Shown here: piece by piece, positions 13,459 to 58,919 of the stretch
Layout: every line of letters starts with the position of its first letter
How positions within the stretch are numbered: position 1 is the stretch's first letter
DNA from: Styela clava
Taxonomy: Eukaryota
DNA: 64,000 nt
Assembly: GCF_964204865.1 (NCBI RefSeq)
Contig: NC_135256.1
Span: 11,656,001 to 11,720,000 of the forward strand
Reading direction: 5' to 3'
Program-made: the position numbers and the translations under genes
The notes under the pieces: generated by a model
The model's input: the letters and a program-made list of their open reading frames with translations, nothing else
The model's database searches: none
Told to the model about the DNA's origin: nothing

Positions 13459-16400
13459 TTAAAATTTCTTCCTTGATTGCTGGCCAGTTTTAGACGATGG
13501 GATTCCGCTTTTCCGGGGAGTAGAACTCGAGTCATCTTGCTTTATTTCCTCAGTTTTCTTGCTCGCTTGACCTAATTCCACCTTTCTTACTCTTTGAGCA
13601 AATGACAATGAACACAAAGTCTCACTCACATTTTTCTCCACAGGAGCAACTTGAACCACCATCAATGTTTTACTGTCTTTACTTAGTGAATCTTGAAGCA
13701 AGTAAGTCAATTTAGAATTTCTAAATGGAACGTGGGTTTGTCTTCCTCCCAATGCATGAATTACATCACCGAGAGCTGAGAGACTTTTGTTGATATTTTG
13801 GGCTTCCTTCAATCGGTCACCAGAAGCACCAGATTTGGATACCCTTTCTGAACCTGCCAAATCTATCAAATTTAGCTTCCCAAAGCTTCTAACAGCGGTC
13901 GTTTCATTGGTACCCTCCACATATACCATAAGTACAGCATGAGAACGAGAACTATGTTCATTCATATTTGTTGAAGCTGTTTTTCGATTGGTATGCCCAA
14001 GTTTAAACAATGCATTCACGTCATCAATGTTTTTAACTTTTTTACAAGTTAATCCAGGAACATATAAGCCGCCATCGCCGTTCATTTTAATTTCCAGTTT
14101 TTCTGTAGTTGGTTTTAGATTCAGTAAATCCTTTAAAGTTTCATTGTAAATTTCTACCAAAGAAACGGACACTTCAAATTTCCATTCTCCTTTTCTTTCC
14201 TCAATGTCTTGAAATAAATCACTAAGAGCTCTTTGATTGATTCCCGGGTCAGATGTTGGCCCTTCCATCGTGTATGTCTTACCAGAGCCAGTTTGACCAT
14301 ATGCAAAAATACAGACATGATACCCGTCGATGCATGATGTAACCAATGATCGAACTTCAGAATAAACTTCAGGTTGAGTTGAAGTTGGTTGGAAAACTTT
14401 ATCCAGCTCGAAAAGTTGACTTCTTCCTCTTTGAGAATTATGTACAAATATCATACCATCATCATCATTATCGTACGTTACAGCATTCTTAGCTTGATTA
14501 CCAGACCCGTCCTCGGATATTGTTGGTCTCACTCTAACAAACACCCTAATATTACCTTTCAGTTCAACCAGTTCATTATGGTATTTCTTTCTCAAGTTCA
14601 TTTCTTTTTTATATCTTCTGATTAATTCTTTGCTGTTTTCACTGATTTCAGCAATAGCATCGCCAATTTTTCTCTCAGTGTGTCTCATTACTTCCTCAAT
14701 TATCAATGGAAATTTAGAGCACTCTTTTTTAATATGATTATTTTCCTTTACCAAAATATGTACAGTAGAAAGCAGATGCCTCAAAGAACATTGAACTTTA
14801 TAAAGTTTTGTGCTGACATTGTGCAAATCATTACTTGCAGACGATTTGATATCATTAAGAACAGAATCATGATTTTCTTGTAATTCATTAAGCTTTCTCT
14901 GGGTTTCTCTTCTTTCGTTTGCAATTTCCTGATCAAGTTTATAGCATTGTTGCTTCATTTGTTCCTCTTTGTCGTCAGCATCTTTTAATTTTCGTTCATA
15001 TTCTGATACAATATCATTCATCTGTTTCAACTTATGTTCCAGTTTTGATTTGTCACTTTTCAGTGTAGATAACTCAACAATTGCCACATCAGATGCTCCA
15101 CTGAGATCATTAATTTGTGATTGGAGATTTTCATTCATATCATTAGCAGAAACGAGTTTCTGTTGAACAGAAAATAATTGTTGCTGTTCTTTTTTCAGTA
15201 CAGAATTTATCTCATGTAATTCAGTTTGAAGCGAAGTGACTGAATCTTCTTTGGTTTCCAAATCGTTTGACAAGGACTCAATCTTTGACGATTTTTCATT
15301 TAGTTTTGTATTTAATTCCTGAATTGTGTGTTTTGCTTTCTTCAATTTCTCCTCAGTTCGTAACACTTTACTTTCCAATCGTTCAATGTCTTTATCAAAC
15401 TCATGTTTTTGTTTCTCTGCAGTGTCATTTCCTTCTTCCAGTTCCTTCGTTAAATCGTCTTTTTGCTGCAGCATTTTCTTTTTCAAAGCCTCAATTTCAA
15501 ACATATTTTCATCACGATTCTTCCTCGAAGACGCTTTCAGTTCTTGCATTTCTTGTTCCAAGTTTACAAATTTTTCTTTCTCTTTTGTCACACTTTTCTT
15601 TAATTTATCATGACTTTTCTTTTCAGAAGAAAGTTCTGCTTCAATCCTCCTTATTTCATCTTGCAGTTTAGATTGTTCATCAAGATATTGAGAACTAGCT
15701 TCATTAGCATCAGATTTGAGCTGACTCATTTCCAATTGGTATTTACTCAGCTGATCTCTCAAACGTGTTACTTCATTCCTCGCCTTCTGAAGACTTTGTT
15801 GAGCATCATTGCGGGAGTTTTCCAATTGAGTTATTTTGTTTTTTGCTTCGCCTATTTCACTCTTTTGCTCAGATGATTCAACCTCAACAACTTTTTCAAT
15901 CATTTTTGTGACTATTTCTGGGGGTTTATTTTCCAAATCATATATTTTTTCATTTTTCGTCTCTAAGTCTTTTCTTAAAACTTCAATTTCCATCCATGTT
16001 TTCTTCTCAATTTTTTTCTTGTCATCTTCCAATTTTCGGACAGTTTTTTCCAATTTTTCTATCTTATTATGGGACAATTCAGTCTTATCTCTTTCAACAA
16101 TTAATTCATGATTTTTATCTTTTAAAGCGCTTTCCAATTCAGAGATAGTCTTTTTTAACTTTTCAACAACCTTTTCATTATCTGTTTTTTGATTGTCTTT
16201 GATTATGAAGTTCCCATTCATCGTTTGATTTTCTTTCAAATCCAACATTTCTGATGTCTTTTCATCTAGCTCTTGTTCCAGATTAATTAGCTGTTCACGC
16301 ATAACAGATTTTTCATCATGTAACGACTTTATATTATCCACAAGTTTTTGAATGTTTGATACTTGAGCAGATCCATCAACAGTCGGTCTAATAGGATTTC

Positions 16401-16878
16401 CTTTCAAATCATCCTCTAACTGCTTAATCTTATGTTCACATTCGAAGACAATATCTTCTAAATTTGTAATCAGTTGATTTTTATCTTTCAAAAGTTCATT
16501 TTGAGCTTTTTTCAGAATTTTTACATGGCGGCTTCGCTTTGTTTCCTCTCTATGTAATTGTCCTTTGCATAATCTTAATTCATTATCAAGTTCTTTATTT
16601 TTAAATAGAAGGTTATCTCGTTCTCTCTGAAGTATATCATATTCAGCTTTGGTGAGTCCAGCAACTGTAGATAAGGTATCATCATCACTTATGTCAGAAC
16701 TTTCCGAGCTTTCTGATGTCACGTTATCTAAATCCGCAAATCCAAGTTCTTGCATCATTAGTTCCCGCTTGGAAGGTGATGGTTGTGGTCTTCTTGGAGA
16801 CAATAGCCTGCTATTGTTAGAAGACTCAACAAGAGGCTTCGGATATTTGAAGTTATATCTTCTGTTATGGGACGTCAT
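13459..16878 (-). CDS. KIFC3: Kinesin-14 family C-terminal motor, KIFC3-like (1139 aa, single coding exon)
   Basis: Long coiled coil, then neck RKKYHNELVELKGNIRVFVRVRP, P-loop GQTGSGKT, switch I NEHSSRSH, switch II DLAGSE, and HVPFRNSKLTYLLQDSL. Confidence 0.92.
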   Translation of the reverse strand: MTSHNRRYNFKYPKPLVESSNNSRLLSPRRPQPSPSKRELMMQELGFADLDNVTSESSESSDISDDDTLSTVAGLTKAEYDILQRERDNLLFKNKELDNELRLCKGQLHREETKRSRHVKILKKAQNELLKDKNQLITNLEDIVFECEHKIKQLEDDLKGNPIRPTVDGSAQVSNIQKLVDNIKSLHDEKSVMREQLINLEQELDEKTSEMLDLKENQTMNGNFIIKDNQKTDNEKVVEKLKKTISELESALKDKNHELIVERDKTELSHNKIEKLEKTVRKLEDDKKKIEKKTWMEIEVLRKDLETKNEKIYDLENKPPEIVTKMIEKVVEVESSEQKSEIGEAKNKITQLENSRNDAQQSLQKARNEVTRLRDQLSKYQLEMSQLKSDANEASSQYLDEQSKLQDEIRRIEAELSSEKKSHDKLKKSVTKEKEKFVNLEQEMQELKASSRKNRDENMFEIEALKKKMLQQKDDLTKELEEGNDTAEKQKHEFDKDIERLESKVLRTEEKLKKAKHTIQELNTKLNEKSSKIESLSNDLETKEDSVTSLQTELHEINSVLKKEQQQLFSVQQKLVSANDMNENLQSQINDLSGASDVAIVELSTLKSDKSKLEHKLKQMNDIVSEYERKLKDADDKEEQMKQQCYKLDQEIANERRETQRKLNELQENHDSVLNDIKSSASNDLHNVSTKLYKVQCSLRHLLSTVHILVKENNHIKKECSKFPLIIEEVMRHTERKIGDAIAEISENSKELIRRYKKEMNLRKKYHNELVELKGNIRVFVRVRPTISEDGSGNQAKNAVTYDNDDDGMIFVHNSQRGRSQLFELDKVFQPTSTQPEVYSEVRSLVTSCIDGYHVCIFAYGQTGSGKTYTMEGPTSDPGINQRALSDLFQDIEERKGEWKFEVSVSLVEIYNETLKDLLNLKPTTEKLEIKMNGDGGLYVPGLTCKKVKNIDDVNALFKLGHTNRKTASTNMNEHSSRSHAVLMVYVEGTNETTAVRSFGKLNLIDLAGSERVSKSGASGDRLKEAQNINKSLSALGDVIHALGGRQTHVPFRNSKLTYLLQDSLSKDSKTLMVVQVAPVEKNVSETLCSLSFAQRVRKVELGQASKKTEEIKQDDSSSTPRKSGIPSSKTGQQSRKKF

Positions 16879-31597: not shown

Positions 31598-32871
31598 ATT
31601 TAAAATTAATAATTATTACATTTGTTGTGCATTTACGTTATAGCTTGTTGTTTTCACACTGACTAGATTTGTGATTATGATGTCATAATTGCTCGTTGGT
31701 TTTACCGTAAATATATACGTTGCGCGCGCTTATTGTATTTTGGAGTATACGATACCACATTTTGCTGTATAATGAACTGTAATATATATATTTGTTTATT
31801 AGTTATATGGCAATACGCAAGACATCACAGCCTTGGCTTGAAGGATGAAGTTTTAAAATTTGCAAGAAATTACGTCTTATAATAATCTTTAAGATATTCG
31901 GTGGAATTGTACTAATGTAATGATGCAATATTAATGTTGAAAATATTTCCTTTTTTTAAAAATTATTTCAATAGCTCGAAAATAAATAAAGCAAATGCCT
32001 AGACAAGGGAGCACATATCAAATATATGTTAGCCGTAGCGTAAAGAACCATGCACAACCAATTGAATGTTGGGCAAAAGAGCAATTCTGAAATGTTTTTG
32101 TATGGAGGTGAATTTGAACGTGTGTCCAAGAAATATAAAAACATTGAAATATACCCAAGGTAAAAATATCGGGCCCTGTAGGACTCAGAGTGATTCGAAA
32201 AGAAGTACTAGTCTTCTAGCGACTTCGTACATCTTTAAATATTGAAAATAGAATGGTTCATAAATTGCAAAGAAAAGTGATTTTTTTTCTCAACAACTAC
32301 AATAAACTCAAAGCCTCCAACAATAAACGCAAAACAGATAAAATGAGGATGACCTAAAAAACGAGTTGAATTTCTAGCGCAGTCTGAAGTTCTAACCCTG
32401 ACTGGATAATTAGTAATTTTCTTATTTTGAGCGTTGGCTGGGGTTTTGTACACAAGATAGATAGATACACAAGATATCATTAAAATAATAAACAAACACA
32501 TTTTTGTTTTGCATGTACTTTAGACACTTGATTTAACTGAGAGAGACCATGCCTCGAAAAGTTCATTTTGACAATGCTGGGATGCGAATCGGGGCCGTGT
32601 AATAGCTTGTATATTCTTGTACAGGAAGGCTTAGATATAGCATGACACGGCCATACCTCTTTTAAACAAAGGTGATACTTTCGATCATAGATTTACGCCT
32701 TTGTTGGCAATAACAAATACAACAGTTAGTGAACCTATTCTATGCACGACACATCCAATGATATGTACACTGTGTACTGCCAATATAAATGTGCGATCAA
32801 AAAAAACATGCACATTATTAGCAGTTGTCACTGGCTTCACTTCTAGGCAGGCGTACATCTTGTTACTGAAC

Positions 32872-33630
32872 ATGATGTTTCACTTAGTAATACTGAATTT
32901 TATTGTTGTTACTGGCACAGTAGGGCTTGATCCAAAATGCTCAAGTGAATGGGACACAACCAACTCGTTCCTCAACATCGCTTTGGACTGGAGCAGTAAC
33001 GTCGCACAAAGTGACAGCGACAAGACAAATATGGAATCAGACAATAATAAGATTCTCCAAGCGTCATCTAGTCCTACGTGTTCTGCTCATATGGATGAGA
33101 AATCATCACTAGTCACCATGACTTTAGATTGGGAAAGTCCAGATAATGCTATGATTGACGAAGATACATTGTCAGTAAATTTCGATTCGCAAATTAAGGA
33201 AATTGAAAACCGTTTAAATCATGTTGAGCAGGGTTGGTTGGTAATTGACAAAAGACGTTTTTGGTTTGGTGCACATGAAATGACTTGGCAAGCGGCATAT
33301 TATGAATGTATGTATAAAGGTGGAAGACTCCTCTCGAAGGGAATGCGTGATCACGAGGAAAAGGGCGAAATTATATCCATAGTTCAACTTAAGAATGCAG
33401 TTTATTGGATTGGGCTGAATGATATTAAAAACGAAGGCACATGGATATGGTCAGATGGGACGTACGCTAGTTCCGACGAAATACCCAGACGCAGTAAACG
33501 GAAGTTAATACGAGAAGATTGTGCAACTTTATTTTGGCAGCGTGAAAACAAAAAGAAACTGCGGGGTGCAGTTGAAGATCAAATATGCTCAAATAAATTT
33601 CGAGTCATATGCGAAAAAGATTCATTATAA
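32872..33630 (+). CDS. Secreted C-type lectin domain protein (intronless), paralog A
   Basis: Signal peptide MMFHLVILNFIVVTGTVG, short coiled coil, then a CTLD: MTWQAAYYEC..KGGRL, YWIGLNDIKNEGTWIWSDG, EDCA, C...FRVICEK. The true start is likely ATG 32872, by comparison with paralog B. Confidence 0.88.
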   Translation: MMFHLVILNFIVVTGTVGLDPKCSSEWDTTNSFLNIALDWSSNVAQSDSDKTNMESDNNKILQASSSPTCSAHMDEKSSLVTMTLDWESPDNAMIDEDTLSVNFDSQIKEIENRLNHVEQGWLVIDKRRFWFGAHEMTWQAAYYECMYKGGRLLSKGMRDHEEKGEIISIVQLKNAVYWIGLNDIKNEGTWIWSDGTYASSDEIPRRSKRKLIREDCATLFWQRENKKKLRGAVEDQICSNKFRVICEKDSL

Positions 33631-41456: not shown

Positions 41457-42251
41457 ATGTACATCATGCTTTATTTGGTAATACTGAATTTTATTGTTCT
41501 TACTGGCGCAGTAGGGTTGGAGCCAAAATGCTCAAGTGAATGGGACACAACCAACTCGTTCCTCAACATCGCATTGGACTGGTACAGTACCGCCGTACAA
41601 AGTGGCGACGATGAGGCAAATATGGAATCAAGAAATAATACTCTTCTTCCAACGTCCTCTAGTGCTACGTGTTCTGCCCATATAGATGAAAAATCATCAC
41701 TAGTCACCATGACTTTAGATTGGGCAATTCCAAATAATGGCATGATCGACGACGATACATTGTCAGTTTCTGAACTTTCAAATGCGATATCAGATTTAGA
41801 TTGGCAAATTAAAAAAATTGAATACCGCTTGAAACATGTCGAGCAGGGTTGGTTGGTAATTGGCAAAAGACGTTTTTGGTTTGGTGCACAGACAATGAAT
41901 TGGCAAGCGGCATCTAATGAATGTAAGTATAAAGGAGGAAGACTCCTTTCGAAGGGAATGCGTAATTACAATGAAAAGAACGAAATTGTATCCATGGTTC
42001 GACTTAAGAATGCAGTTTATTGGGTCGGGCTAAATGATATTAAAGATGAGGGCACATGGATATGGTCAGATGGGAAGTACGCTAGTTCCAACGAAAGACC
42101 CAGACAAAACAGAAAAAAACGGAAAAGAAGACGTGAAGATTGCGCAACTTTATTTTGGCAACGTGGCAAAAACAAGAAACTGCGTGGTGAAGTTGAAGAT
42201 CAAGAATGCTCTAAAGAATTTCGAGTCATATGCGAAAAACATTTATTTTAA
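41457..42251 (+). CDS. Secreted C-type lectin domain protein (intronless), paralog B
   Basis: Highly similar to 32872-33630, including flanking DNA (41100-41450 resembles 32510-32870). CTLD YWVGLNDIKDEGTWIWSDG...EDCA...CSKEFRVICEK. Confidence 0.9.
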   Translation: MYIMLYLVILNFIVLTGAVGLEPKCSSEWDTTNSFLNIALDWYSTAVQSGDDEANMESRNNTLLPTSSSATCSAHIDEKSSLVTMTLDWAIPNNGMIDDDTLSVSELSNAISDLDWQIKKIEYRLKHVEQGWLVIGKRRFWFGAQTMNWQAASNECKYKGGRLLSKGMRNYNEKNEIVSMVRLKNAVYWVGLNDIKDEGTWIWSDGKYASSNERPRQNRKKRKRRREDCATLFWQRGKNKKLRGEVEDQECSKEFRVICEKHLF

Positions 42252-43072: not shown

Positions 43073-43570
43073 ATTTGTATTAGTGTTTTTCGTCAAACCT
43101 GTGCATCATAATGACGCACAACCTTAACCATAACCTGTTACAATACTACGTTCAGGTTGTACGCAATCTTGGTGCACAAACTACGCAAGCACCAAATTTA
43201 CTAGGAAATAAAATCAATAACTTTTAGGTATTTGTTGAGATATTGGTATTAGTGTTTTTCTTCAAACTTGTGCATAATAATGACGCACAACCTGAACCAT
43301 AACCTGCTACAATACTTTGTTCAGGTTGTGCGCAATCTTGGTGCACAAACTACGCAAGCACCAAATTTACTAGGAAATAAAATCAATAACTGTATTTGTT
43401 GAGATATTGGTATTAGTGTTTTTCTTCAAACTTGTGCATCATAATGACGCACAACCTGAACCATAACCTGCTACAATACTTTGTTCAGGTTGTGCGCAAT
43501 CTTGGTGCACAAACTACGAAAGCACCAAATTTACTAGGAAATAAAATCAGTAACTTTTATGTATTTGTTG
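43073..43570. repeat. Tandem array of three ~165-bp units, each carrying a MITE-derived hairpin
   Basis: Units tattagtgttttt...gcacaacctgaacc...gttcaggttgtgcgcaatcttggtgc...agcaccaaatttactagg; related to the 31495 MITE family. Confidence 0.85.
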
Positions 43571-43703
43571 AACCCAGCTTTGGGTCGCGACCAATATAGA
43601 GAGAAATACTGCTGAAACGTACGCGTAAAATAAAGAGTACTATTTCAAAATACCCTCTATTGTTGCAATTAACAATACAAGCCTGCTAATGCAGTCGCCA
43701 GTG

Positions 43704-44223
43704 GTTCAAGTGGATATACATCCGGTGGAGAACAGTCAATTATTTGTTAGCGAGAATTGTTATGCAGAGGGATGATCACGACGACGCAGTGAAAGATAAT
43801 TATATCACGAGAACAAGAATGAGAAAATTTGAGCATCGCTTTCTTGTCTCACACAATACAATATCAGGTACAATTGAAGATTTTCAAGACTGGAAATATT
43901 TATAACATACTTGCAGTCCAACAGCTAATATTTTCCATGCTTTCGTACGGACAAAGTCCAAAGTTCAAGTGGATATACATCCGGTGGAGAACAGTCAATT
44001 ATTTGTTAGCGAGAATTGTTATGCAGAGGGATGATCACGACGACGCAGTGAAAGATAATTATATCACGAGAACAAGAATGAGAAAATTTGAGCATCGCTT
44101 TCTTGTTTCACACAATACAATATCAGGTACAATTGAAGATTTTCAAGACTGGAAATATTTATAACATACTTGCAGTCCAACAGCTAATATTTTCCATGCT
44201 TTCGTACGGACAAAATCCAAAGT
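43704..44223. repeat. Near-perfect direct tandem duplication, 2 x 259 bp
   Basis: gttcaagtggatatacatccggtggag...ttcgtacggacaaa at 43704 and 43963. Confidence 0.95.
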
Positions 44224-44439
44224 CGTTTTCCCATAAACAGTATAGCCCACAATTAATTTAGGACTTAAAATTTGGTTACACCAAGCATTAGATGAATATT
44301 TATTTTGGTTTTGCGTTGGCTTGAATGTTTGAGCGTGTTTTAGAGGAACAAAGATGAATGTTAAATTAATAAAGTCGGCAATACTTTCATGAATTACTAC
44401 ATTATATATCTATGATATATATAATCATTGCTCTTATAT

Positions 44440-47358
44440 TTACATTAACTTTAATTTCAGTGATTCACGGAGCTCGTTCAAGTAGTTGGTGTCCGGGTAT
44501 CCATTGCTGAAATTAAAACATACCTGGAGTTGGAGCAACCAAAAATTACACATAATATCCTAAAGAAGTATACTGACTTGTCCAGCCCCCCGTCAATACT
44601 GGTCTTATGCGGTATGTCTTTCCATGTAATAGTTCCGCACCCATCACTCTGCTTCTCAATCTTAAATATCATCCCGGCATTAAATGCCAGTCGGAGATAA
44701 TCAATAAGTTGTATTACGCCATCTTCTATTGGTAAATAGGCGGTGATTTTTTGAGCTGAATAAGGGATTCCCTGCATATTGAAATATATATATTGCATAT
44801 TAAAAAATTATAAGTCCGCCTTCTTCTCAAACTGTCTTTGCACAAAAGTTACCTCAAAAGTTCCAGCAGGAAAGCTATAGTTAATAACATAGTAGTTACA
44901 CCACCCAAACTCAGTCGTATAAAGTTCTGAAGGATGGATATTCATTTGACCACCAGATATTCTATTCAGCACCGTTATGTGTTGGTTTTGTTCTAATTTA
45001 CCTGAAAAGTTGAAAAATATTTCATTGAATTGTCAAACCGATTAAGAAATGACACATCAACTTTGTGTTTGAATGGTATAGTGAATTGTTCATAAATAGG
45101 ATTATCGTGAATTATTTTCCTGGTTCTATAATAAACAATATTTAAAAACCTGTATGAATATTTCGTGTGGTTTCCGAGAATGCGTTTCCAGATCTAAACA
45201 CCGAAGGTAGAGTCGTTGCTGTTGTCGTGTTGTATGTTGTAGACGTATTTCTGAGATTAAATTGGTTGGGAATTGTGGTTACCTGAGTTGTGGCACTTAA
45301 TGAAGTAAATTCAGATTGACTTGTACTACTAATCGTTGAAATTTCTGCTCCAGAAACGAATCCAGACTGAATTGTACTTTTAGGGGCTGAAAATCCTGTT
45401 CCAAAGCCGGATGATCCAGGTTGACTTGTACTTTTAGTCGCTGAAAATCCTGTTCCAAACGCGAATTCAGATTTACTTGTACTTTTAAGGGCTGAAAATT
45501 CTGTTCCAAAACCGAATCCAGACTGACCTATACTTTTAGGCACTGAAGATCCTGTTCCAAAGCCTGATCCAGATTTACTTGTACTTTTGGGCGCGGAAAA
45601 TCCTGTTCCAAGACAGAATCCAGACTGACCTATACTTTTAGGCACTGAAGATCCTGTTCCAAAGCCTGATCCAGATTTACTTGTACTGTTGGACGCGGAA
45701 AATCCTGTTCCAAGACCGAATCCAGACTGACCTGTACTTTTAGATGAAGATCTTGTTCCAAAGCCGCATCCAGGCTGACTTGTACTTTTAGGCGCTGAAT
45801 ATCCTGTTCCAAAACCGAATCCAAACTGACTTGTACTTTTAGGCGCTGAATATCCTGCTGTTCCAAAACCGAATATGGACTGACCTGTACTTTTAGGCTC
45901 TGAATATCCTATTCCAAAGCTCCATCCAGACTGACTTGTACTTTTAGGCGCTGAATATCCTGTTCCAAAACCGAATCCAGACTGACTCGCAGTTTTAGGC
46001 GCTGAATATCCTGGTCCTAAACCGAATACAGACTGACCTGTACTTTTAGACGCTGAATACCCTTTTCCAAAACCGAATCCAGACTGACTCGTACTCTTCT
46101 GCGTTGAAAATCCCTTTCCAAAGCCGAATATGGGCTGACTTGTACTGCCTGACTTGGTTTCATCCGTATTTATCCGACGAAATAATTCATCAATAAGCAA
46201 ATCTTTGCATTCATGAGATTCGGTAACAAGAGTATTGCATCGCACATTTTCACGTAAAAAATCGACAGAAAATTGTTTGAGATCGATCATCCTAATCAAC
46301 TTCGGAAGTGTTTTCTTTCTCATCAAAACATCATGGTTGATCCACATCATTGCTGCCTGCCACCTGTTAGAGCTAGATAGTGAGTGAATTCCTTCTCCTG
46401 ATTTTACCACAAAAACAATCTCTTCGTCACTGAGACTGCCGAACTCTTCTAAATTCATCATATGTTGCAAATTTCCTCTAATGAATCGATGAATTTCAAG
46501 TTTGATTTTACTCCAAATATCGATTTCATTCATCTTATACTTTTGCAATAGGCTTTTCAGCGCAAAGCAAGTATCAATTTCTAAATGCTTCTCAATATCG
46601 GAAAACAGATTGAAAACCACAAAACTCTCCACTGGCTTGTTACCATTCACTAGTGGATCTTTTAAAATGGTCTCCAGAACAAAACGACACGGAAATTTTT
46701 TTAAATTCAATGCATGTACTAGTTCTAAAATATGTTGTTGGTGCGCATCATTTGAGCCCTGCACCCACGTTATTACTGCTTTCCAAAGTGCTTCATGATT
46801 TGCACGTGAAACCTTTATACAATTTGCCAATGTTGCTTTGTTGATAGATGGGAATAATTCATCGGAAATGACGGCTTCGAAATTGGTGGTTACAACTTTC
46901 AATGCGGCCTGTTTTACGTCGCCTCGACTGTACAAATGTGCTAAGTTTAATACATGCAAGCAATTATTCAAAAAAATATTTGATTTCAGATACTGAAAGC
47001 AATAGTCTGTCAACGACAATAGTTGTAAAATATCCGACGCGTTTAAAATATCTCGTAAGGTATCCATCTTCAAATCAACCGTCCCTAAGTACATGAACTG
47101 AATGCACTGAGTGATATCAACAGCGGTCACTCCTGTCATATTAACAAACCCATCAGTAGCCTCCTTCATGTTGTTGAATAGCATGCTCTCAAAATAAGCA
47201 GAGGAAGATATCAATACATTTCGATGAACTAGAAATGATTCATTCTCCACGTTTATTTTGAAATCGCAAAGAACTTTGTTTTCCCTTAACCTAGCAAGGG
47301 AAGTCATCAAACGGTCAGCTTGGTCTGTTTTAAGGGAGCCTGTAATTTTAGGATTCAT
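44440..47358 (-). CDS. BTB-BACK-BACK protein with FG-rich repeats, predicted to splice to a C-terminal Deltex C-terminal (DTC) domain
   Basis: Large exon 47358-45150: BTB (LCDFKINVENESFLVHRNVLISSSAYFESM...MKE), two BACK-like regions and a repeat tract. It joins in phase 1 (ACA G|gt...ag|GT AAA) to exons 45001-44853, 44771-44578 and 44506-44440, which encode GGQM...INYSFPAG...GIPYS...TAYLP...LRLAFNAGMIFKI...ITWKDIPHKTSIDGG..NGYPDTNYLNEL. Confidence 0.75.
45310..46146 (-). repeat. Coding minisatellite: about 16 x 51 bp encoding 17-aa STSQSGFGFGTGYSAPK-type repeats
   Basis: Read directly from the 741-aa ORF; the DNA unit ...cctgttccaaa.ccgaatccagactgac.tgtactttta... recurs. Confidence 0.95.
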
Positions 47359-47419
47359 AGTAAACACTGAAACAAAAATTGTATGAGAGGTCTATGGTGG
47401 CCCATCGGTGTCACGTGTA

Positions 47420-47644: not shown

Positions 47645-48742
47645 TGGTCCGCCTCGTGGCCCATCGTTGTCACGCGTTTTTATTTTTGGAAAATTTGATG
47701 CTGCTTGGGACCAACGTTGTCAGGCTTAATCCTACACGCACAAATGTGTTTCCTGGGTTTCTAACTCACTACTGATTTTCATGAGCAATATCCAATAAAT
47801 TCAACATGAAAAAGTTCTATAAATTCTCCATGCTACAAGTTCAACCACAACCAATATATTTATAATAATGATAAGAGAATATAGAATTGGATACGAAAAT
47901 TTGTTTTTACGTGTAGAAGATAATTTAATTGGAAAATGCTGCTTAACTGCTCAGACACTCGTGCGATGCCGGTACGGTACCGTCTGACCGTACCGGTACC
48001 CATGCAATCACTCGTGAAAGAATGGGAGATACGGATAGTCTCGTAGAATATAGTCTACTGAAACACTCTCTGCGCCTGCCCCATACCGTACAGCCGTAAC
48101 GCACCGATCCAGACAAATAATAAATCGCCCGTGCTCAACCATTTATTTCAATCCATACCTCGACTCACTATATTCTACTAGGATCGAGGTATGGATTGAA
48201 ATAAATGGTTGAGCACGGGCGATTTATCATTTGTCTGGATCAGTACGTTACGGCTGTACGGTATGGGGCAGGCGCAGAGAGTGTTTCAGTAGTCTATATT
48301 CTACGAGACTATCCGTATCTCCCATTCTTTCATGAGTGATTGTATGGCTACCGGTACGGTCAGACGCAAAACGACTATAACCGACTACCGGTATTTGGTA
48401 AGACGGTACCGGCATCGCGAGTGTCCAGACAACTGAGTAGTTAAGCAGCATTCTCCAATTAAATTACCTTATACACGTAAAAACAAATTTTCCGAATTTT
48501 CGTATTCAATTCTATATTCTCTTATCATTATTATAAATATATTACTTCTTGTTGAACTTGTAGCATGGAGAATTTATAAAACATTTTCATATTGAATATT
48601 GCTCAAGAAAATCAGTAGTGAGTTTGAAACCCAGGGAACACATTTATGCGCGTAGGATTATGCCTGACAACGTTGGTCCCAAGCAGAAGCAAATTTTCTA
48701 AAAATAAAAACGCGTGACAACGATGGGCCACAAGGCGGACCA
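47645..48742. mobile_element. ~1.1-kb foldback (long inverted repeat) element
   Basis: The arms are reverse complements over about 500 bp (tggtccgcctcgtggcccatcgttgtcacgcg... / ...cgcgtgacaacgatgggccacaaggcggacca), with a ~20-nt central spacer at about 48163-48183. Confidence 0.9.
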
Positions 48743-53422: not shown

Positions 53423-53886
53423 CTCACCACATTTGTTTTTTTGCTGAAAGTTTTAGCTGCTCCACCAAAAATTTTCATTGATATGGTGTAGGCTAATTCT
53501 GATTTTTGAGATAAAGATCACCCATCAGTCAATTTATATTCTTGCCTACCGATTAGATCACACAGCATAAATCCTCACACTGCAACTTTTTATGATCCTT
53601 TCTTCCTGAAAATATACATATCTCTTATAAAAATCTACATTCCTTGACAAATCATTACTGTATTGGGTACCTATAAGAACATTTACAACTGTGGCGGGAC
53701 TGGAATTGCCCTTTTTTTTATTGTTTTGTATTTTATTTATATTTAGTGTCTAGTTATTGCATATGCATTGGTGTGTAGAGTCTGAGCCCTAATTCGGCCG
53801 ACAGTTGGTTTCAGTTACTCGACTCCAACCGCCACTGCATATGTGAACTGTGTTGCGGATTCGCAGTGCCATTCTTCTTGCTTCTG

Positions 53887-56658
53887 TATTGTGTTACAAT
53901 GTTTGGAGTATATTAAAATGGAATATCCGGGTTATCTGGAGATCTATACTGACGGTTCAAAATCTGCAACTCGCTGTGGTGCTGCCTTTTTTATACCAGA
54001 TTGTGACGTTTCGAATAAATTCCGCCTCGATCCATTGTCTACTTCCTACTGTACGGAATTATATGCCATATATCGAAGTTTGATATGGATATCACAAAAT
54101 AGGCCTTCAAAAGTATTAATATTGTGCGATTGTCTTTCTGCATTGGAAAGCATACAGAATATTTGGGATGTTAAGCATTTTTTATCGACAAAAATACAAC
54201 TACTTCATTCTATTATTTGTCACACGACTGATATCAAGTTTATGTGGATACCAGCACATATTGGAATTAGCGGTAATGAGGCAGTGGATCGACTGGCGAA
54301 AGACGGAGCAAATGGAACTGTCATCAATGCCTGAATGCTGTTCTCCAACGGTCATTGAAAGAAGCTAAGACATTGTGCAAGCAAACATGTCTTGCAAAAT
54401 GGAATTTAACATACCAAGCTAACGATACTGCAAGCCATTAAAAGAACTTTCGAACTTATATAGCCCAAAAGACTGTCTATTTTAATTTTTCCCGCCAAGA
54501 AGAAATAGTATTTTTTCGGCTTCAAACTGGACATATTAGACTCAACTATCATTTATTTAAAATAGGGCTACTTCCCACAGGGCACTGTAGTCGATATGAC
54601 ACAAATGAAACTGTTTCTCATTTTATTTTATATTGTCCCAAGTATAATACCTTACGATGCGAATTAAGACGTTAAGCAGCAAAAATGAATGTGCCCTGGG
54701 AAATTATTTGTGTTTTCAATGTTCCTGATTTGATTCCATTTATTATTAGCTTTGCTATATCCACCAAACGAGAGTTGTGAACCTATTTTATTGTATCATA
54801 CTGACTGCTCTTTTTGATATTTGACGCAAAAGACCCAGTTGTCAAAGACGCCATTAACCCTTTTACCTTACCTTCTTGCTTCTGCTGTCAATGGGTAAGG
54901 ACCGTATTTTGTCGCTAGCCCAAAAGACTGTCTATTTTAATTTTTCCCGCCAAGAAGAAATAGTATTTTTTCGGCTCCGAACTGGACATATTAGACTCAA
55001 CTATCATTTATTTAAAATAGGGCTACATCCCACAGGGCACTGTAGTCGATATGACACAAATGAAACTGTTTCCCATTTTATTTTATATTGTCCCAAGTAT
55101 AATAACTTACGATGCAAATTAAGACGTGAAGCAGCAAAAATGAATGTGCCCTGGGAAATTATTTGTGTTTTCAATGTTCCTGATTTGATTCCATTTATTA
55201 TTAGCTTTGCTATATCCACCAAACGAGAGTTGTGAACCTATTTTATTGTATCATACTGACTGCTCTTTTTGATATTTGGCGTGGCGTAAATGGAATTTAA
55301 CATACCAAGCTAACGATACTGCAAGACATTATAAGAACTTTCGAACTCATATAGCCCAAAAGACTGTCTATTTTAATTTTTCCCGCCAAGAAGAAATAGT
55401 ATTTTTTCGGCTTCAAACTGGACATATTAGACTCAACTATCATTTATTTAAAATAGGGCTACTTCCCACAGGGCACTGTAGTCGATATGACACAAATGAA
55501 ACTGTTTCTCATTTTATTTTATATTGTCCCAAGTATAATAACTTACGATGCGAATTAAGACGTTAAGCAGCAAAAATGAATGTGCCCTGAGAAATTATTT
55601 GTGTTTTCAATGTTCCTGATTTGATTCCATTTATTATTAGCTTTGCTATATCCACCAAACGAGAGTTGTGAACCTATTTTATTGTATCATACTGACTGCT
55701 CTTTTTGATATTTGACGCAAAAGAGCCAGTTGTCAAAGACTCCATTAACCCTTTTACCTTACCTTCTTGCTTCTGCTGTCAATGGGTAAGGACCGTATTT
55801 TGTCGCTAGCCCAAAAGACTGTCTATTTTAATTTTTCCCGCCAAGAAGAAATAGTATTTTTTCGGCTTCGAACTGGACATATTAGACTCAACTATCATTT
55901 ATTTAAAATAGGGCTACATCCCACAGGGCACTGTAGTCGATATGACACAAATGAAACTGTTTCCCATTTTATTTTATATTGTCCCAAGTATAATAACTTA
56001 CGATGCGAATTAAGACGTGAAGCAGCAAAAATGAATGTGCCCTGGGAAATTATTTGCGTTTTCAATGTTCCTGATTTGATTCCATTTATTATTAGCTTTG
56101 CTATATCCACCAAACGAGAGTTGTGAACCTATTTTATTGTATCATACTGACTGCTCTTTTTGATATTTGGCGTGGCGTAAATGGAATTTAACATACCAAG
56201 CTAACGATACTGCAAGCCATTATAAGAACTTTCGAACTCATGTAGCCCAAAAGACTGTCTATTTTAATTTTTCCCGCCAAGAAGAAATAGTATTTTTTCG
56301 GCTTCAAACTGGACATATTAGACTCAACTATCATTTATTTAAAATAGGGCTACATCCCACAGGGCACTGTTGTCGATATTACACAAATGAAACTGTTTCC
56401 CATTTTATTTTATATTGTCCCAAGTATAATAACTTACGATGCGAATTAAGACGTGAAGCAGCAAAAATGAATGTGCTGGGAAATGGGAAATTATTTGTGT
56501 TTTCAATGTTCCTGATTTGATTCCATTTATTATTAGCTTTGCTATATCCACCAAACGAGAGTTGTGAACCTATTTTATTGTATCATACTGACTGCTCTTT
56601 TTGATATTTGACGCTAAAGACCCAGTTGTCAAAGACGCCATTAACCCCTTTACCTTAC
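53887..56658 (+). mobile_element. 5'-truncated I/Nimb-clade-like LINE (RNase H + C-terminal Cys/His motif) whose 3' end is tandemly amplified five times
   Basis: IYTDGSKS...TELYAI...ILCDCLSAL...FMWIPAHIGISGNEAVDRLAK; RLRTGH...C...ETVSHFILYCPKY repeated five times; 3' tail TTTTACCTTACCTT; 13-bp TSD CTTCTTGCTTCTG at 53874-53886 and 56659-56671. Confidence 0.88.
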
Positions 56659-57134: not shown

Positions 57135-57560
57135 TCAATCTTGACGCGAGACAGCGCGCACAGAACACAGAAAATTGCAATACGTCGCGCCAACGACTAA
57201 CATACCGTCGCACGATGATTTTCGAATCAATAATCTGTCAGAACCAAGGCGAGCGTGACGGCGAATCCAACATAGGGCGAAAATTTCCGGAGTTACATGG
57301 CGTTGGTCAAATACATATCGCATTTTTATAAGTTTGTACAAATAGTTCTCATCGCTTATAGCAAAATATCTATCACCTCCTAAATTTGAAAACACCCACC
57401 CTAAAATGAAAACTGGGTAGCTAACCAATTGCAAATGCCCCGCAGTACAGAGAAAGTCAACTCGTCCTTCACCTGTTTACGCCTGTACCGTATGATATCG
57501 GTAGTCTGTTGCAGGAAACAGAGCGCGTGTATCTTTCGCTGCGCATTTTCATGAATCGTG
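57135..57560. promoter_or_regulatory. CpG-enriched, probably bidirectional promoter region
   Basis: Locally CpG-rich, directly upstream of the DM9-SOCS ATG. A minus-strand donor GA|GTGAGT at about 57134 suggests a non-coding first exon of a leftward transcript. Confidence 0.45.
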
Positions 57561-58919
57561 ATGGCCAAGCGTTCGCGCCGCAACGTTTTTGGAAATCGGA
57601 CTGCCGCCAATGATGAGATTAAAACTGGTTCTTATCCGCTGGTTACTGGTGATTATCAATGGGTACCAGGACCTGAATCCGATGAGCAATTCCCCGATAA
57701 TATGGTATGCGGTGGAAAGTTGGAAACCGGGCAATTTGCTTACATTGGACGTGCAGACGTTGAAGATCAAACCCCGTCCGGCTTTGTTTTGAAAGAAACG
57801 CGAGAATTACATGTTCCCTATGGTACCTCGGAGCACCGTCTACGTAACTATGATGTTTTGGTTGTCAAGGATCAAAATATTCTGGAATGGCAGGAGTGTG
57901 AAAATGGTCGTCCTCCCTCTACCACGTGTTGTATACCACTAGAAGTGGGTGGAAACTTTCGTGAAAGCATGCAAATTGGTCGAACCTGTACCCCTTTGAT
58001 TGAGGGTCACACATGGAATGAAATGCAGCTAGAAGTATCTCGATGGGTTAACACTGATAATAATGTGCATAGGTGAGCATCACTAGATTGCAGTGTCTCT
58101 GTATAATAATTTTATGTGTAGTGTACACCTGTTATTAAATATTGTTATTGGATCAAACACCAAAATGTGAAGCAATATGTATACCGTAAGTATATTTTGA
58201 TTTTCCCGCAAAAAAATCAATGAACACACAGAAGATTGGGAAAATCGGGGAAACTTGCAAAACCTTTATAAATGTTTAATACGGTTCCATTACATTTGAA
58301 CCCACGTACATTTGAACCCATGACAATTGCACCTGTATGCTATTGCAACTATGGATTTTTTTTTGTTTCACGGATAGTTAAACCCATACTAACCCTAACC
58401 CATGGGTTTTAGCACCCGCATATAGATTGAACCCGTGGATATACGCATGGGTTCAAATGTACATGGGTTCAAATGTACAGTCACCGTTTAATACATGTAA
58501 ATATACATGCGCCAGTTTACTTCCTTACTAAAGAGTTTATTGTACAGTGAATAAACTTTGTATATGGTTGTTAGAATCATTCTTTGTGTTTAAATAACTG
58601 AAAGCTTCATAGGCAACCGCATCTAGTATAACCATTTGGTTAATGGAAAAAATAATCTTCATTCATTACACATTGTTTCAGATTGGGAAAAATTCATCGG
58701 AATCACCAATGTCTATATATACCATATCAAGGACGGGAATACATTTTTAGACGCCACGAAATGCTGATGCTTAAAACTTCACCAGGATCTTTAAAAAGGA
58801 TTTGTCGTTGGTCTATCTTAAAATATTTAGAACACATCAGGTCCAAATCCAGCAAAACAATTGATAGCTTGCCACTACCTAACAAAATTAAGGGATATCT
58901 GAAGCACACAGACAAGTGA
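57561..58919 (+). CDS. DM9-repeat (DUF3421) protein with a C-terminal SOCS box, 2 exons
   Basis: Exons 57561-58072 and 58682-58919 (AG|gt...ag|A). Two DM9 repeats: YQWVP...PDNMVCGG...AYIGRA...GFV...LHVPYGTSEH...YDVLV, and LEW...GRPP...VGG...IGR...LGKIH...LYIPYQGREY...EML. Then a SOCS box PGSLKRICRWSIL...IDSLPLPNKIKGYL. Confidence 0.85.
58283..58485. mobile_element. Foldback MITE with a 9-bp TSD in the DM9-SOCS intron
   Basis: TACATTTGAACCCA / TGGGTTCAAATGTA repeats in inverted orientation; TSD GTTTAATAC (58274-58282, 58486-58494). Confidence 0.85.

What the first reader, a model, noticed from the sequence alone, without database searches (positions are those of the whole stretch)
44440..47358. 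BTB-BACK adaptor fused to a RING-less Deltex C-terminal domain: candidate new type of CUL3 substrate receptor
Seen: the 741-aa BTB-BACK-BACK ORF has no Kelch repeats. A donor three codons before its stop (ACA G|GTTTTT, 45150) is in phase with an acceptor 148 nt downstream (45001), and three further small exons then read openly through a complete DTC domain. No RING, WWE or separate start for a Deltex gene lies in between. Established: DTC domains normally follow a RING directly in DTX1-4/DTX3L and bind NAD+/ADP-ribose; BTB-BACK proteins with a hydrophobic-x-E motif (here MKE) recruit CUL3-RBX1. Inference: the DTC serves as the substrate-binding module and the RING is supplied in trans by RBX1. 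I do not know this architecture from characterised proteins.
Basis: partly seen in the sequence, partly recalled or inferred. Interest (0 to 1): 0.9.

Follow-up and report, generated by a model that had tools for sequence, protein, structure and literature searches.

The report
BTB-BACK protein with RING-less Deltex domain
This sea-squirt (Styela clava) gene really does join a cullin-3-type BTB-BACK adaptor to a Deltex C-terminal domain that has no RING and no catalytic residues, and it is one odd member of an unstudied family of about 90 such genes whose Deltex-like end evolves fast, as a target-recognition module would.

Summary
On the minus strand, a 4-exon gene (47358-44440) encodes BTB, two BACK-like helical domains, about 300 disordered residues of 17-aa GFG repeats, and a complete DTC domain. 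NCBI's model LOC120328352 (Styela clava, 872 aa) is exactly this splice model.

It is not a one-off. The genome holds about 88 family-type DTC exons, nearly all open. In all 20 paralogous loci sampled, a DTC exon lies downstream of a BTB-BACK exon on the same strand, with the same intron positions where examined. About 45 predicted Styela proteins carry BTB+BACK+DTC. I found no paper and no named protein from another species.

The BTB keeps the CUL3-contact motif (M-K-E). It resembles solved CUL3-bound adaptors and is predicted to homodimerise.

The DTC keeps the fold. It has lost the residues equivalent to DTX2 His582, His594, Glu608 and Arg535, and the HPNPG loop. Canonical ADP-ribose binding or ubiquitylation is therefore unlikely.

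In the C5 array, dN/dS is 0.15 for BTB and about 1.05 for DTC.

Best reading: a CRL3 substrate receptor with a repurposed, diversifying DTC. First-stage readers noted the same family on other pieces of this genome.

The parts
45150..47358 (-). Exon 1 (ATG at 47358-47356). Encodes BTB, two BACK-like helical domains and the GFG-repeat linker, and ends in the phase-1 donor ACAG|GTTTTT.
   Evidence: The paralogue alignments start at residue 1.
46978..47292 (-). BTB/POZ domain (P0001 residues ~23-127).
   Evidence: Pfam PF00651, 2.5e-20. AF2 pLDDT 83-94. Predicted homodimer: score 0.77 against a best control of 0.00.
47161..47169 (-). M64-K65-E66, the hydrophobic-x-Glu CUL3-contact motif in the alpha3-beta4 loop.
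   Evidence: Aligned to KLHL11 F-S-E and KLHL3 M-S-E (PMC3597819). M/L-K/R-E is kept in 36 of 37 family members.
46675..46962 (-). First BACK domain, including the 3-box helices (P0001 ~133-228).
   Evidence: Pfam PF07707, 5.2e-18. Foldseek matches to KLHL11-, KLHL3-, KBTBD2- and A55-CUL3 complexes.
46162..46641 (-). Second BACK-like helical region (P0001 ~240-399).
   Evidence: Pfam BACK reports two stretches. The AF2 model is all-helical here, pLDDT ~80-90.
45308..46146 (-). 51-bp x 16.4 coding minisatellite giving 17-aa GFGFGTGYSAPKSTSQS-like units. It forms a disordered linker that is unique to this family member.
   Evidence: TRF. pLDDT is below 50 for residues 399-748. The other family members have linkers of 8-45 aa. 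P0002 has 3 fewer units.
45002..45149 (-). Intron 1, 148 nt, GT..AG, phase 1.
   Evidence: The junction is the one used in NCBI models P0001 and P0002.
44853..45001 (-). Exon 2: DTC N-terminal beta-strands.
   Evidence: AF2 strands 755-780.
44578..44771 (-). Exon 3: DTC core (YLP...W...IPHKT...GG). Carries Ile for DTX2 Arg535 and Pro for DTX2 His582.
   Evidence: Pfam PF18102, 9.2e-8. Alignment to DTX3L 3pg6 and DTX2 6y22. The exon boundaries are shared with paralogues.
44440..44506 (-). Exon 4: DTC C-terminal NGYPD...helix plus TAA stop. Carries Asn for DTX3L Tyr719 / DTX2 His594 and Ser for Glu733 / Glu608.
   Evidence: The acceptor TTTCAG|CAATGGA is identical in the C5 paralogues.

Best explanation
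The locus is a real four-exon gene of the ascidian Styela clava (LOC120328352). Its protein has five parts. The first is a KLHL-type BTB domain that dimerises. Next come two BACK-like helical domains carrying the 3-box. Then there is a ~300-residue disordered linker of GFG repeats. Last is a Deltex C-terminal (DTC) domain with no RING. It is a divergent, solitary member of a Styela family of about 90 BTB-BACK-DTC genes. That family arose from BTB-BACK-Kelch relatives when the Kelch propeller was replaced by a DTX3L-like DTC. Most likely mechanism (inferred): the BTB/3-box binds CUL3-RBX1, which supplies the RING in trans. The DTC acts only as the substrate-recognition module. It has lost the His-Glu catalytic pair and most ADP-ribose contacts of Deltex ligases, so it no longer performs or directs ADP-ribose ubiquitylation. 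It has been repurposed as a fast-diversifying binding surface, probably for proteins of pathogens or other non-self or variable targets. Shown here: the gene structure, the domains, the residue losses, the family size, and the selection contrast in the C5 array. Inferred: CUL3 binding, substrate recruitment by the DTC, and the biological role.
For: Gene model. The splice sites and phases are as described. NCBI model P0001 is identical to the model, and P0002 from an older assembly has the same junctions. In all 20 paralogous loci sampled, a DTC exon lies downstream of the BTB-BACK exon on the same strand. tblastn with P0001 found it in 17; Pfam had already placed it in two more; the last (C19:1738031) has none detected. 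The DTC intron positions, phases and even the exon-4 acceptor are shared with the C5 paralogues.

Family. There are 92 matches to a family DTC exon 3, about 88 of them of family type and only about 5 with stops. About 45 predicted proteins carry BTB+BACK+DTC.

CUL3-adaptor features. Pfam BTB and BACK. The best PDB sequence matches are gigaxonin, KLHL3 and KLHL11. Foldseek finds the KBTBD2-, KLHL11-, KLHL3- and A55-CUL3 complexes. M-K-E aligns to KLHL11 F130-S131-E132 and is kept in 36 of 37 members. The predicted BTB homodimer scores 0.77 against a best control of 0.00. That mark was reached by 21 of 30 proteins solved as pairs and by 0 of 23 solved as single chains. The runs agree in at least 96% of contacts and the partner's pLDDT is at least 88. 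The pass may come from memory of solved BTB dimers.

DTC. The fold is kept (pLDDT ~85; Foldseek 3pg6 DTX3L, E 1.3e-6, TMt 0.70). The family-invariant core residues (W836, PHKT, GG, NNGYPD) are present in the window gene.

Recognition-module signature. Among 10 C5 paralogues, dN/dS is 0.15 for BTB, 0.22-0.31 for BACK, 1.05 for DTC and 1.35 for DTC exon 2 (dN>dS in 37 of 45 pairs). The hypervariable sites fall in beta1, beta2 and the loop after YLP.

Origin. In a quick tree the DTC-bearing proteins lie next to Styela BTB-BACK-Kelch proteins.
Against: The exon-1 donor GTTTTT is weak, and a stop lies three codons beyond it, so an unspliced BTB-BACK-GFG isoform without the DTC is possible. CUL3 binding is inferred only from likeness to solved adaptors. 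Styela cullin genes are split into many small exons, so no CUL3 chain could be handed to the complex predictor without joining exons. A dN/dS near 1 could partly reflect relaxed constraint or gene conversion rather than positive selection. It was measured on 10 array genes, not on the window gene. The window gene is only 30-50% identical to the other members and is the only one with the long GFG linker, so it may do something different from the array genes.
Confidence: 0.6

Rival explanations
1. Deltex rebuilt in trans. The DTC still binds ADP-ribose, NAD+ or nucleic-acid 3' ends, so that CUL3-RBX1 ubiquitylates ADP-ribosylated proteins.
For: The DTC fold is kept. Trp (DTX2 W578), the second His of HHKT and the GYPD motif are kept in 35-37 of 37 members. 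The closest DTCs outside Styela are DTX3L-type.
Against: DTX2 Arg535 becomes Ile/Phe, His582 (DTX3L H707) becomes Pro/Ser, His594 (Y719) becomes Asn, and Glu608 (E733) becomes Ser/Ala. The 6-residue HPNPG loop is deleted in every family member. In the human enzymes these residues are needed for ADP-ribose binding and for Ub-ADPr or Ub-nucleic-acid formation (PMC7442474; PMC7615817; PMC11460948). Canonical Styela DTX genes that keep all of them exist elsewhere in the genome.
Confidence: 0.12
2. Not a cullin adaptor. The BTB-BACK part serves only as a dimerising scaffold. The protein acts without ubiquitylation, for example as a decoy or sequestering factor, with the GFG linker driving condensate or nuclear-pore association.
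For: Many BTB proteins do not use CUL3 (my own knowledge). The linker is long, disordered and FG-rich. CUL3 binding was not tested.
Against: The hydrophobic-x-Glu motif and the 3-box-bearing BACK are under purifying selection (dN/dS 0.15-0.31). The nearest solved relatives are all CUL3 adaptors. The GFG linker is absent from the other members, so it cannot explain the family. Pfam's nucleoporin FG model gave no hit at E<=1.
Confidence: 0.15
3. Gene-model artefact or decaying locus. The ORF ends at its own stop (45142), and the DTC exons are unexpressed remnants or part of another transcript.
For: The donor is weak (GTTTTT), with a stop three codons after it. No read evidence was obtained. NCBI models are predictions, and some models in the family look like read-throughs, for example kinase+DTC (P0220, P0223).
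Against: All three DTC exons are open, with matching phases and with the family-invariant residues intact. The same four-exon layout is found in paralogues only 30-50% identical to it. A similar GTTTGT donor is seen in a paralogue. There is no other start and no upstream domain in the 148-nt intron. About 87 of 92 exon-3 copies are open.
Confidence: 0.08

Closest known systems
KLHL/KBTBD BTB-BACK-Kelch CUL3 substrate adaptors (KLHL3, KLHL11, gigaxonin, KBTBD2/4, vaccinia A55)
   Same: The N-terminal BTB followed by a BACK with a 3-box. The hydrophobic-x-Glu CUL3-contact motif. The predicted BTB homodimer. One polypeptide serving as both adaptor and receptor.
   Different: No Kelch propeller. 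A second BACK-like region and a DTC domain take its place. In this gene a 300-aa GFG-repeat linker is inserted as well.
Deltex E3 ligases, especially DTX3L (PDB 3pg6)
   Same: The DTC fold and the sequence motifs YLP, W, HKT, GG and GYPD. DTX3L-type DTCs are the nearest outside Styela.
   Different: No RING, WWE or KH-like domains. The catalytic His and Glu, the adenine-stacking His/Tyr and the Arg are replaced, and the HPNPG loop is deleted.
MATH-BTB (BATH) expansions of nematodes and grasses, and SPOP
   Same: A large, tandemly arrayed, lineage-specific family of BTB adaptors, with a conserved BTB and a fast-evolving substrate-binding domain. Pathogen defence is proposed for those families (PMC1866355, citing Thomas 2006; the detail is from my own knowledge).
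   Different: The recognition domain is a DTC at the C-terminus, not a MATH domain at the N-terminus. The organism is a chordate invertebrate.
BTB-BACK-PHR proteins (BTBD1/2/3/6)
   Same: A BTB-BACK adaptor in which a non-Kelch domain follows the BACK (bioRxiv 10.1101/575910, listed).
   Different: A different C-terminal fold, and no large expansion.

Membership tests
CRL3 (CUL3-RBX1) BTB-BACK substrate adaptors | BTB/POZ fold | tested here: met
   Pfam 2.5e-20. AF2 pLDDT 83-94. Foldseek and phmmer matches to KLHL/KBTBD BTB domains.
CRL3 (CUL3-RBX1) BTB-BACK substrate adaptors | BACK domain with 3-box helices directly after the BTB | tested here: met
   Pfam BACK at 136-231 of the ORF. The alignment to KLHL3/KLHL11 BTB-BACK runs through the 3-box. 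Structural matches to 4ap2, 4hxi and 6i2m.
CRL3 (CUL3-RBX1) BTB-BACK substrate adaptors | Hydrophobic-x-Glu motif in the alpha3-beta4 loop that inserts into CUL3 H2/H4 | tested here: met
   M64-K65-E66 aligns with KLHL11 F130-S131-E132 and KLHL3 M-S-E. Kept in 36 of 37 members.
CRL3 (CUL3-RBX1) BTB-BACK substrate adaptors | BTB homodimerisation | tested here: met
   Prediction only. Score 0.77 against a best control of 0.00. The mark was reached by 21 of 30 proteins solved as pairs and 0 of 23 solved as single chains. The pass may come from memory.
CRL3 (CUL3-RBX1) BTB-BACK substrate adaptors | Physical binding to the CUL3 N-terminal domain | not testable with these tools
   Styela cullins are split into ~60-aa exons. 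No unjoined CUL3 chain was available for complex prediction.
CRL3 (CUL3-RBX1) BTB-BACK substrate adaptors | A second domain that recruits substrate | tested here: inconclusive
   The DTC sits where Kelch would be, and it evolves with dN/dS ~1 against 0.15 for BTB. No substrate is known.
Deltex (DTX) RING E3 ligases | RING domain immediately N-terminal to the DTC | tested here: not met
   No RING in Pfam on any exon. The DTC is preceded by a 148-nt intron and the GFG linker. No RING in the family proteins either.
Deltex (DTX) RING E3 ligases | DTC fold | tested here: met
   Pfam PF18102 on exons 3 and 4. Foldseek 3pg6_B, E 1.3e-6, TMt 0.70.
Deltex (DTX) RING E3 ligases | Catalytic His-Glu pair (DTX2 H582/E608; DTX3L H707/E733) | tested here: not met
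   Pro and Ser in the window gene. Pro/Ser and Ala/Ser/Val across 37 members (PMC7615817, PMC11460948).
Deltex (DTX) RING E3 ligases | ADP-ribose pocket residues (DTX2 R535, W578, H582, H594) | tested here: not met
   Only the Trp is kept. Arg becomes Ile/Phe, His582 becomes Pro, and His594 becomes Asn (PMC7442474).
KLHL (BTB-BACK-Kelch) | C-terminal Kelch beta-propeller | tested here: not met
   No Kelch hit. The related Styela proteins P0010, P0215 and P0216 do have it.
FG nucleoporins | Pfam Nucleoporin_FG-type repeats or a NUP anchoring domain | tested here: not met
   No such Pfam hit at E<=1 on the 741-aa ORF. The resemblance is in composition only.

The most novel reading that the evidence does not exclude
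The ~90 BTB-BACK-DTC genes form an ascidian intracellular recognition repertoire. A catalytically dead Deltex domain has become a hypervariable binding module that feeds pathogen-derived or other non-self or variable targets to CUL3. This would be a chordate counterpart of the nematode and plant MATH-BTB or vertebrate TRIM expansions. The window gene, with its FG-repeat linker, would be a specialised member that partitions into FG-type condensates or the nuclear pore.
Probability: 0.25. Interest if true: 0.8.

Novelty: new variant of a known kind. Interest (0 to 1): 0.6.

Why it matters
All characterised DTC domains sit next to a RING, and they work as ADP-ribose readers and catalysts. Here the fold has been detached from the RING, stripped of its catalytic and ligand-contact residues, grafted onto a cullin-3 adaptor scaffold, and amplified to about 90 copies with a fast-evolving surface.

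If the CUL3 link holds, this adds a new substrate-receptor class to cullin-RING ligases. It also shows that the DTC fold can serve as a general, evolvable binding module. It would give tunicate biology a candidate large family for immunity or self/non-self discrimination.

The practical caution is that the family is annotated only as 'uncharacterized' or mis-named 'kelch-like'. Nothing about its expression, partners or substrates has been shown.

Tried and rejected
That protein is 546 aa, BTB-BACK-DTC, on a 2175-nt contig, and at most 42% identical to any S. clava locus. An intron-free ORF on so short a contig suggests a transcript from another species, but this is inference.

CUL3 complex prediction. 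Not run. The Styela cullin genes are in ~60-aa exons, and I was not to join exons.

First protein search. The single ORF found only the gene itself. The family appeared only with an alignment query.

ESM Atlas. Returned only generic BTB-BACK clusters at scores of 0.83 or less. This is uninformative.

Literature. Searches for BTB together with the Deltex C-terminal / DTC domain, and for Styela clava with BTB, found nothing relevant.

Tree. The careful tree did not finish in time; only the quick tree is reported.

Nucleoporin reading of the linker. Rejected for lack of any Pfam hit.

Origin of the DTC. I looked for a RING or BTB in the 10 kb upstream of the intermediate-type DTC on C1:11.087 Mb and found none.
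Full report
**What is there**

The window is Styela clava, G000 contig C8:11656001-11720000.

On the minus strand, a 741-codon ORF (45142-47367) carries Pfam BTB (2.5e-20) and BACK (5.2e-18, two stretches). It has no Kelch.

Reading the sequence, exon 1 ends at 45150 in ACAG|GTTTTT, three codons before the ORF's TAA. A 148-nt intron ends in TTTTCAG at 45002. The split codon G+GT gives Gly.

The downstream exons are:

| Exon | Coordinates | Splice signals |
|---|---|---|
| 2 | 45001-44853 | donor GAG\|GTAACT, phase 0 |
| 3 | 44771-44578 | donor AA\|GTCAGT, phase 2 |
| 4 | 44506-44440 | acceptor TTTCAG\|C, stop TAA |

All are open.

Pfam DTC (PF18102) hits exon 3 (9.2e-8, profile 46-110) and exon 4 (0.014, profile 114-131). 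Exon 2 aligns to the N-terminal DTC strands of relatives.

I searched the exons separately by reference and did not build the joined protein myself. The joined form I used is a database protein.

**Gene model**

The 90%-clustered protein database returned an NCBI protein, P0001 (uncharacterized protein LOC120328352, Styela clava, 872 aa). Its sequence is exactly this four-exon model starting at the ATG at 47358.

It also returned P0002 (820 aa, older record), with the same junctions but three fewer linker repeats.

The comparative evidence is strong instead:
- A whole-genome six-frame search found at least 52 paralogous BTB-BACK exons.
- With a family exon 3 as query, there were 92 DTC exon matches. 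About 88 are of family type and only about 5 contain stops.
- The copies lie on C5 2.6-4.8 Mb (~50), C6 21.7-22.55 Mb (~31) and C19 (4), with single copies on C1, C8 (this one), C9 and C10.
- I fetched 20 paralogous loci. tblastn with P0001 found the DTC exon downstream on the same strand in 17. Two more (C1, C19:1.45 Mb) have it by the Pfam search. In the last, the C19:1738031 locus, none was detected.
- The C5 genes have the same four exons. The intron positions and phases in the DTC are the same. The exon-4 acceptor TTTCAG|CAATGGA is identical. At least one exon-1 donor is of the same weak type (GTTTGT).

A layout kept in paralogues only 30-50% identical to the window gene is not a prediction artefact.

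**The BTB-BACK half**

- The best solved relatives by sequence are gigaxonin, KLHL3 and KLHL11.
- An AlphaFold2 model built on 36 family sequences is confident for residues 12-399 (pLDDT 80-94).
- Foldseek matches that model to BTB-BACK adaptors solved with CUL3: KBTBD2, KLHL11 4ap2, KLHL3 4hxi, vaccinia A55 6i2m.
- The motif M64-K65-E66 aligns with KLHL11 F130-S131-E132. Those are the loop residues that insert into and hydrogen-bond CUL3 (PMC3597819).
- M/L-K/R-E is kept in 36 of 37 family members.
- A BTB homodimer is predicted, with score 0.77 against a best control of 0.00. That mark was reached by 21 of 30 proteins solved as pairs of one chain and by 0 of 23 solved as single chains. The runs agree in at least 96% of contacts, and the partner's pLDDT is at least 88.
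- Since BTB dimers are solved, this pass shows likeness and may come from memory.

Binding to CUL3 itself could not be tested. Styela cullins are split into ~60-aa exons.

**The DTC half**

The fold is retained. pLDDT is ~85 for residues 750-872, and Foldseek hits DTX3L 3pg6 (E 1.3e-6, TMt 0.70, 34% identity).

The functional residues of Deltex enzymes are gone.

| DTX2 residue | DTX3L residue | Role in Deltex enzymes | Window gene |
|---|---|---|---|
| Arg535 | not mapped | contacts ADP-ribose | Ile |
| Trp578 | not mapped | contacts ADP-ribose | Trp (kept) |
| His582 | H707 | contacts ADP-ribose; catalytic pair | Pro |
| His594 | Y719 | contacts ADP-ribose | Asn |
| Glu608 | E733 | catalytic pair | Ser |

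- The roles come from PMC7442474 and PMC7615817.
- In DTX3L, H707, Y719 and E733 are all needed for ubiquitylation of nucleic acids (PMC11460948).
- The residue mapping comes from the HMMER alignments to 6y22 and 3pg6 and from an alignment with fish DTX3L-like DTCs.
- The six-residue KHPNPG loop is also deleted.

Across 37 family members:
- Phe at the Arg position in 35
- Pro at His582 in 34
- Asn at His594 in 32
- Ala at Glu608 in 31
- Trp kept in 37

Canonical Styela DTX genes with a RING and all of these residues exist elsewhere, on C19:4.66 Mb and C1:1.358 Mb. A Deltex-like ADP-ribose reader or catalyst is therefore unlikely here.

**Family and selection**

- An alignment query found about 45 Styela clava proteins annotated with BTB+BACK+DTC. 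They are named 'uncharacterized' or, wrongly, 'kelch-like'.
- No named protein from another species had this combination.
- One unnamed Logan-assembly protein, P0006, has it. It is at most 42% identical to any S. clava locus, so it is probably from another species.
- A full HMMER scan of 1.84 billion cluster representatives gave no further BTB+DTC protein among the top 150. More distant examples below that list cannot be excluded.
- Typical members are ~590 aa with an 8-45-aa linker. Only the window gene has the ~340-aa linker.
- That linker is a 51-bp x 16.4 coding minisatellite and is predicted to be disordered.
- In a quick tree of the BTB-BACK region, the DTC-bearing proteins group together (SH-aLRT 91), next to Styela BTB-BACK-Kelch proteins. 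The window gene is a deep, long branch.

Nei-Gojobori dN/dS among 10 genes of the C5 array:

| Region | dN/dS |
|---|---|
| BTB | 0.15 |
| BACK regions | 0.22-0.31 |
| Whole DTC | 1.05 |
| DTC exon 2 | 1.35 (dN>dS in 37 of 45 pairs) |

- The most variable sites fall in DTC strands beta1 and beta2 and in the loop after YLP.
- The core motifs are invariant, and nearly all copies are open.
- This mixture argues for diversifying selection on a surface rather than decay. Relaxed constraint and gene conversion were not formally excluded.

**Interpretation**

The best-supported mechanism is a dimeric CRL3 substrate receptor. CUL3-RBX1 provides the RING, and the repurposed, catalytically dead DTC provides target recognition. 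This follows the logic of the MATH-BTB expansions, for which pathogen defence has been proposed (PMC1866355).

The steps from 'has the adaptor features' to 'binds CUL3' and 'recruits substrates' are inference. The ADP-ribose part does not. The gene is also not unique: it is the odd, FG-linker-bearing member of a large family.

No paper in the held library describes BTB together with DTC.

First-stage notes of this scan flagged the same family on other pieces of this genome, and flagged the residue loss and the repeat linker on this window. I reached the same points independently and tested them here.

**Verdict**

This is a real feature and a new variant of a known kind (CRL3 adaptors). It is of moderate to high interest, and is limited by the lack of any expression or binding data.

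Noticed in passing
window 45308-46146 (-): A 51-bp x 16.4 coding minisatellite gives 17-aa GFGFGTGYSAPKSTSQS-like units. The older-assembly protein P0002 has three fewer units, so the array is probably length-polymorphic.
   Followed up: partly
G000:C1:11086549-11087518 (L002, L051, L052): A DTC that keeps the HPSPG loop and the Arg but already has IPHKT (His to Pro) and Thr for the catalytic Glu. No RING or BTB was detected in the 10 kb upstream. It may be an intermediate between canonical DTX and the BTB-DTC family.
   Followed up: partly
G000:C6 array; proteins P0220, P0223, P0217, P0218: NCBI models join protein-kinase domains, or no known domain, to a family-type DTC. These are either read-through predictions between neighbouring genes or further DTC architectures.
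   Followed up: no
G000:C14:3.85-3.95 Mb, C13:19.48-19.61 Mb, C4:19.68-21.41 Mb: Further tandem arrays of related single-exon BTB-BACK genes with 630-760-aa open frames. Related Styela proteins on another chromosome (P0215, P0216) carry Kelch repeats, so these may be Kelch-type too. The BTB-BACK scaffold as a whole is strongly expanded in this genome.
   Followed up: no
window 32701-33630 (+), 41457-42251 (+), 57558-58076 (+), 53843-54334 (+), 13459-16878 (-): Neighbouring ORFs are two C-type lectin domains, a DM9-repeat ORF, an RNase H fragment (retroelement remnant) and a C-terminal-motor kinesin.
   Followed up: partly
window 43268-43599, 43744-44261, and 48008-48339: The ORF listing shows near-identical peptides from direct repeats just 3' of the gene. 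It also shows an inverted pair (48008-48142 minus, 48205-48339 plus) 5' of it. These look like repeat or transposon-derived sequence flanking the gene.
   Followed up: no
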